Shown here in pieces: positions 14,208-21,752 of a stretch of DNA of 41,190 bases (positions are counted from its first letter, which is position 1; each line of letters starts with the position of its first letter). The DNA comes from Vitrella brassicaformis CCMP3155 (Eukaryota > Protista > Chromerida). Location: contig CDMY01000621.1 in assembly GCA_001179505.1 (NCBI GenBank), positions 1-41,190 of the forward strand, read 5' to 3'. Under the pieces are notes generated by a model that saw only the letters and a list, made by a program, of their open reading frames with translations, did not search any database and was not told the origin of the DNA. The position numbers and the translations under genes are program-made.

Positions 14208-17200
14208 CTACTTGAAAGCACTCGTATCGCCCCTCTGCTCTCTCTGCCGGTCCTCCTCCCTCTCTCTCTTGTCGGCCGCCGCGGCTGCGCTGTCCCTCTG
14301 GCGTGCAGGCGAAGTGTTGCGCGAAGACACGGAGGGGCGCGATGGCGGCCGCGATGGGGATGGAGAGGGGGATGGGGGAGGGGGGGCTGGGGAGGGCATC
14401 GGGGAGCGAAGGGTGTGCGGCTGAGAGCACTGGAACAGTGTCACTGAGCCGATGTACGAGTTGGCCAACACCTCAAAGATCAGACCTGACAAGAAAGGAA
14501 TGCACAGCACAGCACAGCATAGGTATTCTGATAGGGTGATTCTGCAGACGATTACTTCGCCCCGTTCCGTGGGTACCTGGGTAGGCGTAGTAGTAGGTGG
14601 ATGTGCCCTGGCTTATGCCGTACCGCTGATTGACCACCAGCGGCTTCCCACACTCGCCCAACGCACGCTGGATCGACGGCCAGCTCGTCGACACCGTGAG
14701 CTCAGCCAAAGGGGCTGCTGTCGTAGCACCAGCACCCGCAGCGGAGCTGCCGGGACGCGCTGCCCCACCGCCCTCTCCCTCTCCCGTCGCCCCACCCTCA
14801 CATGACGGTCGTGGGGCCGTCTCTGCTTGATACCTCCTCTCCCCTTGTGTGTCAGCGGTGGGTGGACGGCCCGTCCTCTGCTCTTCTCCCGGGGTGGCCG
14901 ATTCGTCCTCGTGGCGCCTCCCCTTGTCGCTCTTCTCGGACCCTCCCCCGGCGGCCTCCCCCTCCCTGACGTCACACGGCGGCGACAGGGCAGCCCGGTG
15001 CCCACCACCACCAGCGGCAGCATTGCCGCCCTTGCCCTCCTCCCTCTCCCTCTCCCTCTCCTGCCGCCAGCAGCTCAGAGGGCGCGTGTACGGCAAAGGG
15101 CTCTTGGGCGGCTGGAAGGACGTCGGGTGCCGGGGCAGAAAGCCGCCCCCGACAGGCCCGTCGAAGCCGCCCTCCGCATAGCCGTAATGCTGCCGGTCAT
15201 AGGCTGACGGCGGCATCACTGAGGGCGGAGGCGTGGGCGGGGGCAGGAAGCCCGTCGCCACGGTGTCGACGCTGCCAGTGCCCGAGCAGGTGCTGCCGGA
15301 GCTGCTGACGCCACTGGCACCACTGGCCGTCGACCGCACAGTCCGATACGTCTCGCAGCTGTCACTTTTGACCGACTGGAAGGAAGGTGCGCGGGGCCGG
15401 GCCGGTGGGGGGAGAGGGGCTGGTGATGGGGGGCCGACGACACTAGATGGGTTCGATGACGGGCCTGAAGCGGTGGACGGGGGAGGGGCGGAGGAGGAAC
15501 CCGCCTCGGACACGCAAGGGGCCGGGGACAGCTCTCGTGCGTGGGGACCGTCTGGCGGCACGGATGGGTGGGGCCTTTCCGACGGGACGACTGACAGCTG
15601 CACTCTCTTGGCCGCTTGACCACCTTCTGAAGCTGCTTCGGTCTCCCTCCTCTCGTCTGCGGATGGCCGTACTTCACTGACAGGTGGCGCAGGGGGAGGA
15701 GCAGGCACAGCAGCGGACACAGCACCAGTTGGCGCTTGCCCGCTCGTCCTTCCCTCGTCCGTCGCTGGCTTGGCGGGCAGTGGTGGTGGTGGTTGTGGTG
15801 GCGGTCCTGCCACAGGCCCTGGCGGCGACGTGTGTGGTGAGGGCGCCGGCTTGCCGCTGTGGAGAGACCTCAGGAACGAATGGATGTCCTTGGCCTCTGG
15901 CGGCCGACGCGTAGCAGCCCCCACTGTCCCAGCCGCGGATGACGGCCCCTCCGCATTTGCCCCAGGGCTGACGGTGGGACTGTCCTCTATCTTCACCACA
16001 CCAGCAGCCGCAGGTGGGCTCGGTGCCGCCTCCAGCGACACGTGCACCTCACTCGGCTGCACGCCAGCAGCCGCAGCACTAGATGACGCTGACGCGGGCC
16101 CACTCGCCGACGGCTGTTGAGCCTGAGCCGCTCCCGGCGCACCGCCCTTGCGCTGTTTCTTTTTGTGTCGCCTCTGCCTGCGATTCTGAGAGGCCGTCAC
16201 CCGTGGCGCGAGCCCATCAGATGGGGATGACAGAGGTGATGCTGACACGGGCGAGCTTGCCGGGGAGGGGGAGAGGGATATCGCTGCTCGCTCCGGGGCC
16301 GGCACTGGCGATGCGAGTCGGGGCTCGGGGAGCGTGAGGGAGGGCCTCGGGAGGGCCAGCAGGGGTGGGGGCGACCCTGATGCAGTCTGGGGGCCTTCAT
16401 CGCTGTCGTTTCGCGAGATGAAGGCCGGTACTGGAGGGGCCGGCTCCTGTACCAGCTCTGTCGGTGCCGCCGCCGCCGCAGCAGCAATGTCGTCCGCGGC
16501 TGGCTTCTCTGGCATCTCAGCCTTCGTCCCAGCCGTCCTTTCCGTCGGTGGAGAGTCCAGGCCGATCAAGTCTTCATCAGCCCCAACAAAAGCCACGCCA
16601 GATTGGGGCTGATTGTCCTCATCAGGAGCCTCTATAGCGGCTGAATGGGGATCCACCACCACCTCCTTCTCAAAGCCCGACGGCTCACTCGACACTGCTG
16701 GCCGATCGCTGACAGCCGCTGTCGTCATAACCGGAGCCGTGTGTGGTGCGTGGGCGAAGCTGCCAGTGCCCTCGATGCTGATCAGAGGCGACAGACCTTC
16801 AACCACACCCTTGAAACCGACACAAACACCCACGCCCTCACCCTCACCAGCCGCCTTCATATCCCCCCCTCCCCCGCCGTCGATGCGGCCCCCCCTCCGC
16901 CCGCCTGGCGTCTCCTCTGGCGCTGACGGGTCCGCACTCGCCTCATCTAGCCCATTGAGGCCCAGCAGGTCGACGGCCTCTCTCTGATTGTCGACAGCAG
17001 CCGAGGAGTCCTCAGCCTCGGTCCTCTCCGGCTGGTCCATTGCAGAAGGAACAGACGCAGGAACGGGTGGCGGCGGCGCCTGTGGGCGCGTGTGGGGGAA
17101 GGGGTCTAACGCAGGCGGGGCCGAGAAGGAGTGATCCATGGACGGCCGGGGTGGGGGTAGAGTGGAGGGGCTTTGTGTCGGCAGGGGGATGGAGAAGAAG

Positions 17201-18951
17201 CAGCGACGGTACCGCAGGAACAGCTCGTGACCTGGTGTGCCGGGGAGAACAGAAGGAGTGAGATTCCCATTGCCTTATGCCGTCGTTGCGCACTGCAGGT
17301 CACCCACCTGGCGGATTGGTGTGGAGAATGATTTTCACCACAGTGTTGGTTGACCCATCAAACAACAAATCCATCCCTGCATCACGGCGACCAATCGACA
17401 GCATGATGAGTGTCATGGCCTTTCCTGCCTCTCGTGATGCCGGCGGACCTCTGCTGAAGTAGTTGTAGAAGTAGTCGGCACCAGTGGGGATCGAATGCTG
17501 CTGCTGGTGGTGGTGGTGGCGCGCCCCTCTGGAGCGGGACGTATTGGCGGGGCTGTGCAGGCGCATGACCTCCACATCACGCTGACACACCTGCTCGGGC
17601 GGACCCAACTCAGAGAACACATCCTGTGGACTGATACATACACCGAACACACACACAAGTACTTTCTTTCCATGCCACCCCTCTCCTCTCCTCCCCTCTT
17701 CTGTTTTGTCCCACCCCCCTCCACTCACGTCGCTCCAAAGTCAATCGAGCGTCCCCCAATCTCAATGCCCTTTGCCACACGCACCACCACTGGCCTGCCG
17801 TCTACCCCGTCTCCATCCCGATCGCCATCCCCATCGACAGACCACCAATCGCGCGCTTCCAGCGGGTGCACATAGATGCGGGAAGCGATGGGCGAGGCCG
17901 TCAGCGAAATGTCCACCATCTCTGGCGTGGGTGAGGGGAGCGGCTCACCGGCCGTCGCCAGGGGGTTGGCTGACGGGGTGTAGCCCGACGGCTCATAGTC
18001 AAGGTCCATTGGGTGGTCGCCGCGACGCCGGAGGTCGTCAAAACACTCGGGCGGCAGCGGGAACTTGAAACTCACTCCTGCAGGGACCAAGCAACGATGT
18101 GAGTGTATCATTATCAATGGTCGCCTCTCTATGCCACCCATCGTCCTTAAGGTACCTGGATACTTGAGGGCGTAGTTCTTCTTGCCCGTGTCGAAATCCC
18201 CCGGGTAAGTCGGACCGAACAGCCCGTACAGATCTCGGAAGTGCGGCACCACATCGTCTCCCGCAAATACCTTCCCGTCGTAAGCGAACTTCACGCCACA
18301 GCCATAGCCATTGCCCCACTGCTGCTGCTGCTGCTGCTGCTGCCCCCCACCCTTGGCAATCGACGACCGGCCAGACTGCCGCGGAAGAGCCAACGATGTG
18401 GTCGGACCGCTCCACGTTGATGGCGGGAGAGACGGCGGTGCTGGGGGCGATGGTGATGGTGGCCTCGGCTGGCTGGGCAGGGTGTGTGCTGGAGAGATTG
18501 CCGGTGGGAGGTCGAGCAGGCCGACAATGAGATGCAGCCGCTGCGTGAGTGCGTGGAAGCACAGCTGCAGATGGAGGTCGGGGAGCCGCAGCACCAGATC
18601 GGCGGCGAAGAAGTCGGCGCTGTCGGTGGTGTACATGAGCTCCACGTTGTCCATCGGCATGTGCGACGCTTCATTCTGCACATACCACACACGACACAGA
18701 AACGCACACCAAAACCACGTTTGAGTGACACGATGAGGGGATGCAGAAATGGCTGCCTGACAACCCCAGACCTCCCCATCTCCCTCTCTCGCCTTTGGAG
18801 AGCTTCTGCCTCACTCTGTTGCCCGAGCTGTCTGTGTGTGTGCGTGCGTGTGAGTGTGTTGGCTCACCACGGCCTGTGCGATGTCCATGCCGATGAAGAA
18901 GGGCCCGACGGATGCGCCTGGCTTGACATCCAGCACCCCGAAGCTCTCCAT
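14208..18951 (-). CDS. PHAF1: PHAF1/C16orf70 (UPF0183) family protein with ~830-aa low-complexity insertion
   Basis: Spliced product shows LDVKPGASVGPFFIGMDIAQAV, DLVLRLPDLHLQLCFHALTQRLHLI, FGPTYPGDFD, IDFGAT|PQDVFSELGPP, DYFYNYFSR|GMDLLFDGSTNTVVKIILHTNPPG|HELFLRYRRCFFSIP, and after the insert LTVSTSWPSIQRALG..KPLVVN..YP|GLIFEVLANSYIGSVTLF. These match the family motifs (DYFFNYF..G.DILFD..TH.VKK.VLHTN.PGH..F..Y.RC.F.I; ..FEV..N..IASVTL). Start codon uncertain by about 10 codons. Confidence 0.9.
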
Positions 18952-19133
18952 CACCACTTGTGACGATGGAGAATCTGTGATTCTCTGGCCATTCCACAAC
19001 GGTTCTTACTCATCTACTAGCACACCGCAGCGCGCCTGCCTCTTCTTCCTCCTCCCTCCCTCGGCTGCGCGCTTGTGCGAGCTGAAATCAGTCTCCGAGT
19101 CGCCACTCATTAATTGACCGTTGCGTGAGAAAG

Positions 19134-21197
19134 ATGGCGACTGTGCACTATCCAGTGGCTGTTGGCCGTCCCCCACGGCAGAGGGTACGCGACGGGCTGA
19201 GCCCCCTGATGATCCCTGCGTAATGCCCCAATTCTCTCTGGTGTGTGTGGCTGCATATAGGCTTTGGTTGTGGGTGTGGACTACCATTCCATCCCCTCGC
19301 CCGAGATCACCAAGCTTGCCGCCCCATGTCGCGACGCCTGCACGTTCCGCGAGTGAGAAAGCAGAGAGGGCATGGCCTTGTGTGTGGCTCACTGTTTGTT
19401 CACAGGGCCCTGCGTGCGTTCGCCCCGGATGTGGAGGCCCAGGTCCTGACCGAGACGCTCATCGGGCCTGACGGGCAGCTGCTGCCTCAGCCGGCCCCGT
19501 ATGACAACCTCCCCACTAAGGCCAACGTGAGGCACTTTTGTTTGTCGCGCCATGAACTGCCTGCAGCTGATTGAATGATTGGTTGTTGTCGTGCCTGCAG
19601 GTGATCAAGGGTCTGCAGTGGCTGGTGGAGGGCGCTGCTCCAGGGGACTCCTTTTCCTTCTATTTCGCCGGTGTGTGTGTGTGTGTGTCTCCTTCTCGTG
19701 TCTTGATGTGTGTGTTCCCGGCATGGTGTCTCCTTGTTGTCTCTGTCTGTCTGGCTGGCTGGCTGGATGTCTTGCGCGCATCATCACATCAGGTCACGGT
19801 ACCCGCATCAGTCCCGGCGGCCCACAAGCTGCCGCCACGACTGAAGGCGACTGGGAGGCCATCGCACTGCTCGACAACCTCATGCTGCTCTCCGAGATAT
19901 GGATGTACACCCTCTACCTCCCGCCAAAGACGTTCATCGGCGTCTTCATGGACTGCAGCCACGGAGCGTCCGCACTCGACCTCTCCAACGTAGCCGTGAG
20001 CCCCGGTGGCCCGGCGGAGGCCAAGGTGCCGTCGCTGCGTGTGGGCCCGGGGATGAGGCTGCTGACGCCGCGAAGGCCGCCCATGTGGTTCGACTTCGGG
20101 AGGTATCCGCGGAAGGCTCCCGGGCTTCTGGCTGATCGGCCGCAGGTGAGCGCCTTCTGTTTCTCTGCGTGTGGGTCGAAGCAGACCTGCCAGGAGATCA
20201 CCAACCCAACCAACGGTCTGGCGCAAGTAAGCGGCCGAGACGACCGACCATGGGAAAGAAATGGTGTCTGTTCTGCATCTCTCTGTTCTCTCCTTCATTT
20301 AGGGTTTCTTCACGTTTTGTCTGTACAACGCTTTGTACGAGTTGGCTCCCCGCCGGCGCGTGTCCGTGGCGGACATCTACGAGTGCATGCTCACCTACGC
20401 CCGACACTACGCCAGCCTCCTGCAGCACCCAGACGGCGCACCGATGCCAGTGCTTAAGTACGGGTCGATGATGCCCCGCTACTGCCGGTTCTTCATGATG
20501 AAGCCCAAGCCCGGGGCGGAGGGGCTGCAGGCCACGTGGACGCTGTCCGAGGCCACCGTGTCGCCCCTCGGCTCACCGTATCCTCCAAGCCCTGGTGCTT
20601 TCCCGAGCCAGAGGGGCATCCCACCGGCCACCATGCGTGCGACCATCGGGGGACCGAGTGAGACAAAATGATGGGAGGCACGACACGAGACACTTGCATG
20701 TCTCTCTCTTCCTGTCAGCTCTGATGCCGCCACCACCTGCAGGCGGCTACCGCCCCATGGTCATCCCCCCTCCCGGCCACACACAAATGCCCATGCAGAT
20801 GCAGAGGCCGATGCCGATGCCGATGCCGATGCCGCCCGCCGCCCCAGGAGCGTCCCCACATCCCGTCACGCCTCACATCCCCTTCACCTCGATGCCGATC
20901 GACTCCCACCGGCTCACACAGACAGTCCGGGGCGTCGCGTACACGGGAGGGGTGCCTGTGGCCGTCCGCAGGTTGGTGCCGCCTGGCGGCCAGGTTGGTG
21001 CGGGTGCTACTGTGCCGCAGCTGGTGGTGACGCCCGAGGAGGGGGCGCCGGCACCGCAGCAGGAGAAGCAAGAGGGGGTTGAGGGCGAGCAGGGCGGGGC
21101 GGGTCTGGCGCCGGCCGGGGCGGAGGAGCGGCAGCCGATTGGGGACGCCACGCCGGGAGGGACCTTTGTGGCCATGCCACACATCATCCAGGGGTAG
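19134..21197 (+). CDS. Metacaspase-like protein (clan CD, C14B) with catalytic Cys replaced by Ser and a Pro-rich C-terminal tail, 6 exons
   Basis: QR|ALVVGVDY..LAAPCRDA, LPTKAN|VIKGLQWLVEGAAPGDSFSFYFA|GHG, VFMDCSHGASALDL, FSACGSKQTCQE, |GFFTFCLYNAL. These match the metacaspase motifs ALLIGINY, GC.NDV, PT+ANI..A+.WLV.GA.PGD.LFF.YSGHG, DCCHSGSALDL, SGC.D.QTS and GAMT.AF..AL. Confidence 0.88.
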
Positions 21198-21752
21198 ACA
21201 GCAGACAAATACCAACACACAAACAGGCAGACAGACAGGCAAACTTCGTTGTCCGTTGTCTGAGCGAATGGCTGCACGAATGAACGGCTGAGTGGGTGAG
21301 TGTGTGTGTGTCTGTCTGTATGGGTGCTACGGTATTCCCCCCGGTGTGCTCCAAAGAGGGCACACGGGCAGTTGGTTGACTGAGTGAGGGCAGCAACGGG
21401 TCCAAACGTTCCTATTCATCGACGTAAGATTGACACGTTTGCAGCTACGGACGAGTGGATGACTGAATGAATGAAGTCAACTGAAGTCACGTACAGTACA
21501 CTCAGGCATGAAATGCAGTGCAGCATGGCATGTGGGCAGCAGCTGGTCTGCGTGGTCTGTGATACGATACAGGGGTCGGATAAGATAAACACACGCATAC
21601 AGCCCACGGAGGACATGCGTTCATTGCTCACACAGACAGACAGACACGCTGCACATATCTGCCTGTGCCTTCGCGCTCGCACCCCACCCACCCCCCGCCC
21701 ACCAACCAACTCGCTCCAAAGGCAAAATACCCACCCAAAATGACTTAAAGCC

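What the first reader, a model, noticed from the sequence alone, without database searches (positions are those of the whole stretch)
19790..19983. Metacaspase with the catalytic Cys replaced by Ser (DCSHGA instead of DxCHSG)
Seen: the His of FAGHG is intact, but MDCSHGASALDL aligns without gaps to FDCCHSGSALDL, placing Ser (agc 19957-19959) at the nucleophile position and Cys one residue earlier. The acidic Ca2+-binding loop (usually DE.DG.DE) reads AAATTEGDWE. Known: Trypanosoma brucei MCA4 carries Ser at this site and is a pseudopeptidase, and plant MC9 can use a second Cys equivalent to the one kept here in APCRD. Inference: a pseudo-metacaspase regulator, or an enzyme using a displaced nucleophile.
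Basis: partly seen in the sequence, partly recalled or inferred. Interest (0 to 1): 0.7.

Follow-up and report, generated by a model that had tools for sequence, protein, structure and literature searches.

The report
Expressed pseudo-metacaspase of Vitrella
The gene is a real, transcribed metacaspase relative of the alga Vitrella brassicaformis that has lost its cutting cysteine and its calcium switch but kept its pocket for basic residues, and it belongs to a small, previously unremarked clade in which every member lacks that cysteine.

Summary
Window 19134-21197 (+) is a seven-exon gene, protein CEM26602.1 / A0A0G4GCS2 of Vitrella brassicaformis CCMP3155 (533 aa). It passes the Pfam Peptidase_C14 cut-off and models as a metacaspase fold.

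HMMER against TbMCA2 and MAFFT against 18 canonical metacaspases both align MDCSHGA to xDCCHSG without gaps. Ser167 (agc 19957-19959) sits in the nucleophile column and Cys166 one residue before, as in T. brucei MCA4.

It is not a sequencing error. Spliced transcript contigs from two independent studies cover the site with no differences.

New here: the protein belongs to a clade of four clusters (100/100 support). These are a second Vitrella paralogue and two environmental sequences. The nucleophile column reads S/A/S/P and the column before it C/T/T/S. The His (GHG) and both acidic S1-pocket Asp are invariant. Three of the four Ca2+-site Asp are gone. New invariant motifs appear (SEIW and R-x-L-x-x-R-x-x-P-x-W-F).

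Correction: the Cys of APCRD lies one residue after the conserved GC-x-ND Cys column, which holds Pro39.

Best reading: a Ca2+-independent pseudopeptidase that may still bind Arg/Lys. A displaced nucleophile is unlikely. This is a new variant of a known kind, of moderate interest. An untested note from this scan reports another probable pseudo-metacaspase elsewhere in this genome.

The parts
19134..19184 (+). Exon 1, residues 1-17 (MATVHYPVAVGRPPRQR). There is no long N-terminal prodomain.
   Evidence: The ATG and the GT donor at 19185 are read. The joint 19184|19261 is seen in transcript contig X6 record 7.
19261..19352 (+). Exon 2: strand beta1 (ALVVGVDY) and AAPCRD. Pro39 lies in the conserved GC-x-ND Cys column. 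Cys40 = tgt 19327-29. Asp42 = gac 19333-35, the S1-pocket Asp equivalent to TbMCA2 D95.
   Evidence: Asp42 is invariant in all 23 aligned sequences.
19406..19526 (+). Exon 3, residues 48-88.
   Evidence: Joints 19352|19406 and 19526|19601 are seen in the transcript contigs. The exon peptide is found in P0001.
19601..19670 (+). Exon 4: VIKGLQWLVEGAAPGDSFSFYFA plus the first base of Gly112. It forms the strand before the catalytic His.
   Evidence: tblastn of this exon hits six canonical metacaspase loci of the same genome at E 3e-5 to 1e-3.
19793..20226 (+). Exon 5, residues 112-256. It holds G-H113-G, the degenerate Ca2+ loop, LLSEIW (19885-19902), MDCSHGASALD (19948-19980), the linker motif R200...F211 (20056-20091) and SACGSKQT.
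19957..19959 (+). agc = Ser167, in the column of the metacaspase nucleophile Cys (TbMCA2 C213).
   Evidence: Alignments. Confirmed without differences in two transcript assemblies.
20303..20657 (+). Exon 6, residues 257-375: the p10-like part (GFFTFCLYNAL...) and the start of the Pro-rich tail.
   Evidence: Joints 20226|20303 and 20657|20719 are seen in X6 and X9. Helices 258-270 and 278-295 appear in the model.
20719..21197 (+). Exon 7, residues 375-533 and the stop codon: a Pro/Gly/Ala/Met-rich low-complexity tail that includes PMPMPMPMP.
   Evidence: The tail (residues 336-533) is 21% Pro and 14% Gly.

Best explanation
The gene encodes a non-catalytic metacaspase-fold protein (a pseudopeptidase). 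It belongs to a small, old clade that lost the nucleophile Cys and the allosteric Ca2+ site while keeping three things: the fold, the active-site His-Gly, and the two Asp that make the S1 pocket specific for Arg/Lys.

Shown: the homology, the fold, the residue replacements, their conservation pattern across the clade, and transcription with correct splicing.

Inferred: the protein no longer cleaves. It probably still docks an Arg or Lys side chain in the retained acidic pocket, without needing Ca2+. That side chain could come from a partner or from its own invariant linker arginines R200/R205, by analogy with the autoinhibitory motif of type II metacaspases. On this view it acts as a binder, decoy or scaffold, perhaps towards the several canonical DCCHSG metacaspases of the same genome, with the Pro/Met-rich C-terminal tail as an interaction or targeting region.
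For: - Family: P0001 passes the Pfam Peptidase_C14 cut-off (31.2 vs 21.4 bits). The clade profile hits solved metacaspases AtMC4, Yca1, TbMCA2 and AtMC9 at E 6e-22 to 2e-19.
- Fold: the AF2 model has pLDDT 83 and pTM 0.87, with His113 just after strand 105-111 and Ser167 two residues after strand 159-165. The top 29 Foldseek hits are metacaspases plus the bacterial homologue 3BIJ, ahead of paracaspases.
- Site table: the nucleophile column is Cys in 18/18 canonical rows and S/A/S/P/P in the clade. The D189 column is Asp in 18/18 canonical rows and L/L/L/M/M in the clade. D190 is Ser in all clade rows, and D173 is W/Y/gap. H158, D95 and D211 are invariant in all 23 rows.
- Clade: the four members form one clade at 100/100 support and share the invariant motifs SEIW and R..L..R..P.WF.
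- Precedent: TbMCA4 has the same Cys-Ser pair and is inactive until S219C (PMC3220528).
- Expression: the gene is expressed and spliced exactly as P0001 in two studies.
Against: - No biochemical test exists.
- His113 with its flanking glycines and both S1 Asp are strictly kept, which is also what an active enzyme would keep.
- Cys166 sits next to the nucleophile position.
- The clade has only four sequence clusters, so column statistics are thin.
- The window protein has the longest branch (1.58), so it could have drifted in its own direction.
- Binding of Arg/Lys, a role for R200/R205 and any link to active paralogues are inference. I could not read model coordinates.
Confidence: 0.7

Rival explanations
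1. It is an active protease with a non-canonical nucleophile. Cys166 (one residue before the usual position), Ser167 itself, or Cys40 near the GC-x-ND site would work with His113.
For: - His113, Gly112, Gly114, Asp42 and Asp165 are invariant.
- Cys166 and Cys40 lie next to the two positions where metacaspases carry reactive cysteines.
- AtMC9 uses a second Cys, Cys29 (PMC2064784).
- AtMC9 is Ca2+-independent after loss of only one of the four Asp (PMC10235996) and is the best structural match.
Against: - None of Cys166, Ser167 or Cys40 is conserved in the clade: the columns read C/T/T/S, S/A/S/P and C/A/I/V.
- Cys40 is off by one from the conserved Cys column, which holds Pro39.
- TbMCA4, with the identical Cys-Ser pair, showed no activity on a P1 library, and that paper states that no Ser-nucleophile caspase-fold protease is known.
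- SG after the nucleophile-His, which contributes to the oxyanion region, reads GA here.
Confidence: 0.13
2. It is a decaying gene copy with no function, drifting after duplication.
For: It has the longest terminal branch in the clade (1.58 against 0.89 for its paralogue). Single exons are too divergent for Pfam.
Against: - The 533-codon reading frame is intact across seven exons, and all six introns are GT-AG.
- It is transcribed and correctly spliced in two studies.
- 43 columns are invariant over about 30% identical clade members, including motifs outside the old active site.
- The nucleophile is absent in all four members, so it was most simply lost before the two Vitrella paralogues split.
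Confidence: 0.07
3. The Ser codon is an assembly or sequencing error for Cys (tgc).
For: agc and tgc differ by one base.
Against: Two independent transcript assemblies read the stretch with no differing letters. The relatives also lack Cys in this column.
Confidence: 0.01

Closest known systems
Trypanosoma brucei metacaspase 4 (TbMCA4), a pseudopeptidase
   Same: It has the metacaspase fold with the His kept. The nucleophile Cys is replaced by Ser and directly preceded by a retained Cys (Cys218-Ser219 against Cys166-Ser167). It coexists with active paralogues (PMC3220528).
   Different: - TbMCA4 regains Ca2+-dependent activity on S219C, so its Ca2+ site works. Here three of the four Ca2+ Asp are replaced.
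- TbMCA4 keeps the conserved Cys98, which is Pro39 here.
- TbMCA4 was made cytosolic by a G2A mutation of its predicted N-myristoylation site. This protein starts MATV, with no Gly2.
- No TbMCA4 sequence was in my tree, so the origins were not compared directly. The clade's own motifs (SEIW, PPxWF) are absent from TbMCA2.
Canonical type I metacaspases (TbMCA2 4AF8, Yca1 4F6O; MEROPS C14B)
   Same: The order is p20 then p10. The motifs KALxxGxxY, GxxxD, PTxxN, WLxxGAxxGD, (S/A)GHG, xDxxH and QT are shared. The S1 Asp equivalent to D95 and D211 are kept. TbMCA2 is the best PDB sequence match (E 9e-10).
   Different: There is no nucleophile Cys and no D173/D189/D190. There is no N-terminal Pro/Gln-rich prodomain; a Pro/Met-rich tail sits at the C-terminus instead. 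A p20-p10 linker of about 55 residues carries a clade-specific invariant motif.
Arabidopsis metacaspase 9 (AtMCA-IIf, 8A53/9N3E)
   Same: It is the best structural match (TM 0.64-0.70). It is Ca2+-independent with an incomplete Asp quartet. A linker Arg is buried in its S1 pocket as an autoinhibitory motif (PMC10235996), which is a precedent for the invariant linker Arg here.
   Different: AtMC9 is an active type II enzyme with Cys147 and Cys29. It shares only 17-18% identity.
Dyad-less apicomplexan metacaspases (PfMCA3, PbMCA3, two of three T. gondii MCAs) and cyanobacterial pseudo-orthocaspases
   Same: These are caspase-fold proteins without a full His/Cys dyad, some of them in the sister lineage of chromerids (PMC6657590; PMC6426788).
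   Different: In PfMCA3 both dyad positions are replaced, by Ser and Pro. Pseudo-orthocaspases carry Tyr/Ser. Here His is invariant. No apicomplexan protein was found by the exhaustive HMMER search with exon 5 at E <= 1e-3. Orthology was not tested further.

Membership tests
Peptidase C14 / metacaspase (sequence family and fold) | Significant match to the caspase-domain profile, with p20 followed by p10 | tested here: met
   PF00656 scores 31.2 bits against a cut-off of 21.4, over residues 16-277. The clade profile hits solved metacaspases at E about 1e-21. Foldseek's top hits are AtMC9, Yca1, TbMCA2 and AtMC4.
Peptidase C14 / metacaspase (active enzyme) | Catalytic His in (S/A)GHG after strand beta3 | tested here: met
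   G112-H113-G114 follows strand 105-111. His and the preceding Gly are invariant in all 23 rows, and the following Gly in 22 of 23.
Peptidase C14 / metacaspase (active enzyme) | Nucleophile Cys in D-x-C-H-S-G after strand beta4 | tested here: not met
   Ser167 occupies the column, where Cys is present in 18/18 canonical rows. The site is confirmed in transcripts.
Peptidase C14 / metacaspase (active enzyme) | Acidic S1 pocket (TbMCA2 Asp95 and Asp211; PMC4357240) | tested here: met
   Asp42 and Asp165 are invariant in all rows. The other two pocket residues differ: Cys92 is Pro39 and Ser156 is Ala111.
Peptidase C14 / metacaspase (active enzyme) | Allosteric Ca2+ site of four Asp (TbMCA2 D173, D189, D190, D220; PMC4357240) | tested here: not met
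   Only Asp174 (= D220) is kept. D189 is Leu144 and D190 is Ser145. D173 is Trp132 by MAFFT or Thr128 by HMMER. Acidic residues Glu129, Asp131, Glu133 and Glu146 lie nearby.
Peptidase C14 / metacaspase (active enzyme) | Arg/Lys-specific peptidase activity | not testable with these tools
   This needs recombinant protein and peptide substrates.
TbMCA4-like pseudopeptidase | His kept, nucleophile Cys replaced by Ser, preceding Cys kept | tested here: met
   D165-C166-S167-H168 against TbMCA4 Cys218-Ser219.
TbMCA4-like pseudopeptidase | Lack of activity, restored by Ser-to-Cys; processed by an active paralogue | not testable with these tools
   This is a bench experiment. Loss of the Ca2+ site suggests that a simple S167C change might not restore Ca2+-dependent activity.
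Second-Cys metacaspases (AtMC9 Cys29 / TbMCA2 Cys92 column) | Cys in the G-C-x-N-D motif | tested here: not met
   Pro39 is in that column and Cys40 is one residue later (HMMER, MAFFT). Clade members read P/T/C/S there.
Type III metacaspase | p10 placed before p20 | tested here: not met
   The order is p20 (16-175) then p10-like (231-310).

The most novel reading that the evidence does not exclude
The clade is a metacaspase fold turned into a Ca2+-independent reader or trap for basic residues. The intact acidic S1 pocket and His would be held permanently occupied by, or would compete with, the invariant linker arginines (R200/R205). That would be a never-cleaved, frozen autoinhibitory motif, released to capture Arg/Lys motifs of partners or to titrate the cell's active metacaspases. 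A more radical possibility is that the window paralogue has re-evolved catalysis with the displaced Cys166, which would be the first shifted-nucleophile caspase-fold protease.
Probability: 0.15. Interest if true: 0.7.

Novelty: new variant of a known kind. Interest (0 to 1): 0.42.

Why it matters
Pseudo-metacaspases are known from trypanosomes, Plasmodium, Toxoplasma and cyanobacteria, but their mode of action is poorly understood. This clade offers a clean natural experiment. The nucleophile and the Ca2+ switch are gone, while the His, the substrate-specificity pocket and a linker Arg motif are strictly kept. That pattern points to binding without cleavage.

It occurs in a free-living photosynthetic relative of apicomplexan parasites that also carries several canonical metacaspases. 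This makes regulator-enzyme pairs testable. The public record calls the protein only 'Peptidase C14 caspase domain-containing protein', with no note that it cannot be a canonical cysteine peptidase.

Tried and rejected
- Single exons by reference gave no Pfam hit at E <= 1 and no PDB hit for exon 5 at E <= 10. A six-frame PF00656 scan of the genome did not pick up the window either. The domain is visible only in the whole protein or with the clade profile.
- The word-index search with the exon-5 open frame found nothing, because the length window of 160-511 aa missed the 533-aa protein.
- Word-index searches with clade profiles found no new clade member. They also failed to list P0002 and P0003, so their blanks are weak.
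- The JGI metagenome scan used the patterns LLSEIW and KWLVEG. It returned 25 loci; every one in which the motifs could be read is a canonical DCCHSG/DSCHSG enzyme, and none has SEIW.
- The literature search for chromerid or alveolate pseudo-metacaspases found nothing specific.
- I could not obtain model coordinates. His-Ser/Cys distances and the position of R200/R205 were therefore not measured.
- DNA-type runs X2 and X4 gave no contig over the Ser codon.
- P0004 (a YDG-repeat protein) was a spurious low-complexity hit.
- P0007 scored high only because it holds two canonical domains.
- Complex prediction was not used, because no spliced sequence of an active paralogue was at hand.

Full report
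**What is there.** The window is a GC-rich, intron-bearing eukaryotic stretch. Its assembly has 72.7 Mb in 1064 contigs. An exact look-up names the organism and the protein: Vitrella brassicaformis CCMP3155, CEM26602.1 / UniProt A0A0G4GCS2, 'Peptidase C14 caspase domain-containing protein', 533 aa.

Reading the three forward frames gives seven exons: 19134-19184, 19261-19352, 19406-19526, 19601-19670, 19793-20226, 20303-20657 and 20719-21197. All six introns are GT-AG and 53-122 nt long.

Exons were searched one by one, by reference. The exhaustive HMMER search with exon 5 returned the database protein P0001. Each exon peptide was then found in P0001, in order and without change. All whole-protein analyses used P0001 as returned.

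**Checking the observation.**
- The Gly of FAGHG is split by intron 4. His113 is cac 19795-97.
- AAATTEGDWE follows in the loop after the His.
- MDCSHGASALDL spans 19948-19983, with Cys166 tgc 19954-56 and Ser167 agc 19957-59.

Single exons are too divergent for Pfam or PDB sequence searches. The full protein passes the Peptidase_C14 gathering cut-off (31.2 bits against 21.4, residues 16-277).

HMMER aligns P0001 to T. brucei MCA2 (4AF8/4AFP/4AFR) at E 9e-10. vfmDCSHgasalDL lies opposite avfDC(G/A)HSGSIMDL, where G/A is the crystallographers' C213 mutation. So Ser167 = C213, Cys166 = C212, Asp165 = D211 and Asp174 = D220. MAFFT with 18 canonical metacaspases gives the same columns. Vitrella's own canonical paralogues read MDCCHSGT.

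**Reads.** Contigs of four public runs were laid on 19100-21300. Two of them, from different studies, are spliced transcript assemblies.
- X6 record 7 (1532 nt) carries joints at 19184|19261, 19352|19406, 19526|19601, 20226|20303 and 20657|20719. It covers 19792-20226 with no differing letters.
- X9 record 10 covers 19792-20122, also with no differences.
- Intron 4 (19671-19792) is removed in both, although the tool masked part of it as repeat.

The gene is therefore transcribed and spliced exactly as P0001, and agc is not an assembly error. The two DNA-type runs gave no contig over the site.

**Fold.** AlphaFold2 on residues 1-335, with a 23-row alignment, gave mean pLDDT 83 and pTM 0.87. His113 follows strand 105-111, and Ser167 lies two residues after strand 159-165. 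That is the canonical topology of the dyad. Foldseek ranks AtMC9, the bacterial homologue 3BIJ, the Candida and yeast metacaspases, TbMCA2 and AtMC4 first (E 1e-16 to 4e-11, TM up to 0.70). Paracaspase MALT1, legumain and caspase-8 come after them. The ESM Atlas neighbours are all Peptidase_C14.

**A clade without the nucleophile.** The exhaustive search over 1.84 billion cluster representatives found only three real relatives of exon 5 at E <= 1e-3.
- P0002 is a second Vitrella protein, CEM27468.1, on contig C635.
- P0003 is a 715-aa product of an intron-free 2255-nt contig in JGI sample 3300017354.
- P0005/P0006 come from ENA assembly ERZ24794637.

A six-frame scan of the genome with the clade profile finds only the two Vitrella genes, and they share the intron at profile position 245.

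The four proteins are about 30% identical yet share 43 invariant columns. In a maximum-likelihood tree with 29 other metacaspases they form one clade (100/100, stem length 1.38). That clade sits on the eukaryotic side of a 97/91 split from the side holding the bacterial-labelled homologues. The two Vitrella paralogues are sisters at 92/79. The window protein has the longest branch, 1.58. Long-branch attraction cannot be fully excluded, but the shared motifs and the linker insertion argue for a real clade.

**Site table, TbMCA2 numbering from PMC4357240.**

| Position (TbMCA2) | Role | 18 canonical rows | Clade (P0001 / P0002 / P0003 / P0005) |
|---|---|---|---|
| C213 | nucleophile | Cys in 18/18 | S / A / S / P |
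| C212 | residue before the nucleophile | C, S or T | C / T / T / S |
| H158 and the preceding Gly | catalytic His | invariant | invariant |
| D95, D211 | acidic S1 pocket | invariant | invariant (Asp42, Asp165) |
| C92 | S1 pocket, second Cys | Cys in 16/18 | P / T / C / S |
| S156 | S1 pocket | Ser in 16/18 | A / S / A / A |
| D189 | Ca2+ site | Asp in 18/18 | L / L / L / M |
| D190 | Ca2+ site | mostly Asp | S in all |
| D173 | Ca2+ site | Asp in 13/18 | W / Y / gap / gap |
| D220 | Ca2+ site | mostly Asp | kept (Asp174) |

The lost D189-D190 pair lies inside a new invariant motif, S-E-I-W (LLSEIW, 19885-19902). The p20-p10 linker carries the invariant pattern R200-x-L-x-x-R205-x-x-P-x-W-F (20056-20091), which is modelled with pLDDT of about 80-87. 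All three full-length members have almost no N-terminal extension and a Pro/Gly/Ala/Met-rich C-terminal tail. That is the reverse of the usual type I layout.

**Interpretation.** The nucleophile column is variable and never Cys, and the neighbouring Cys166 and Cys40 are unique to the window protein. The simplest reading is therefore that the clade's ancestor had already lost catalysis.

AtMC9 does use a second Cys, Cys29 (PMC2064784). But the equivalent column (TbMCA2 Cys92) holds Pro39 here, and Cys40 aligns with TbMCA2 Cys93.

TbMCA4 has the same Cys-Ser pair. It showed no activity on peptide substrates or a P1 library, and it became a weak Ca2+-dependent peptidase only after S219C (PMC3220528). 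Here the Ca2+ site is also gone. Loss of a single Asp already goes with Ca2+ independence in AtMC9 (PMC10235996).

What stays conserved is His-Gly, both S1 Asp and a linker Arg motif. That is what one expects of a protein that still recognises a basic side chain. In type II metacaspases a linker Arg or Lys is buried in the S1 pocket as an autoinhibitory motif. The invariant R200/R205 could play this part, or could be a site cut by active paralogues, as MCA3 cuts MCA4. This step is inference, because I had no access to model coordinates.

**Novelty.** Pseudo-metacaspases are known: TbMCA1 and TbMCA4, PfMCA3 and PbMCA3, two T. gondii genes (PMC6657590), and cyanobacterial pseudo-orthocaspases (PMC6426788). 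No paper in the library links metacaspases with Vitrella in this sense. The public name does not flag the loss.

The clade differs from TbMCA4 in three ways. It has the additional loss of the Ca2+ site. It has its own invariant motifs. It has a C-terminal rather than N-terminal low-complexity region. I rate it a new variant of a known kind, of moderate interest.

The clade is rare in current databases. No further member appeared in two word-index searches or in a JGI metagenome pattern scan. Those searches are imperfect, since they missed known members.

**Limits.**
- The clade has only four sequence clusters.
- Read support is from contigs, not raw reads.
- There is no biochemistry.
- The taxa of the two environmental members are unknown.
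- The apicomplexan dyad-less metacaspases were not compared directly.

Noticed in passing
L001 772-1899 (-) = G000:C638, about 14430-15557: A 375-aa open frame is the best PF00656 hit in the genome (41.9 bits). It reads FYFTGLGSQ at the His motif and VVVIDGHSPS at the Cys motif, so it is another caspase-fold protein lacking both dyad residues.
   Followed up: partly
G000:C635:39098-40314 (+) (L016-L019, L024): This is the paralogue CEM27468.1 (P0002, 541 aa). It has MDTAHAL at the nucleophile site (Cys replaced by Ala). Its tail matched only weakly, below the cut-offs, to coiled-coil-type families (TMCO5, bZIP). It shares the intron at profile position 245 with the window gene. Its expression was not checked.
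   Followed up: partly
P0007 (MMETSP transcript, 634 aa): It holds two complete canonical metacaspase units (both FDCCHSG) in tandem in one polypeptide. Its linkers carry R-Y-x-P-P-P, which resembles the clade's linker motif.
   Followed up: no
window 19671-19776: Intron 4 holds a (GT)n run and CTGG-type repeats. The read tool masked 19663-19776 as repeat.
   Followed up: no
window 20807-20837: The hexanucleotide coding repeat for PMPMPMPMP matches unrelated contigs in runs X2, X4 and X9, with loose ends on both sides. The same repeat therefore occurs elsewhere in the genome.
   Followed up: no
window 19100-21300: Marine sediment and microbial-mat metagenomes of 2023-2025 (X13-X19) hold 5-18% of the sampled 31-mers. 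This suggests near-identical Vitrella-like DNA in the environment.
   Followed up: no
window 17725-18690 (-): A long open frame upstream on the opposite strand contains a poly-Gln run and Pro-rich stretches. It is probably part of a neighbouring gene.
   Followed up: no
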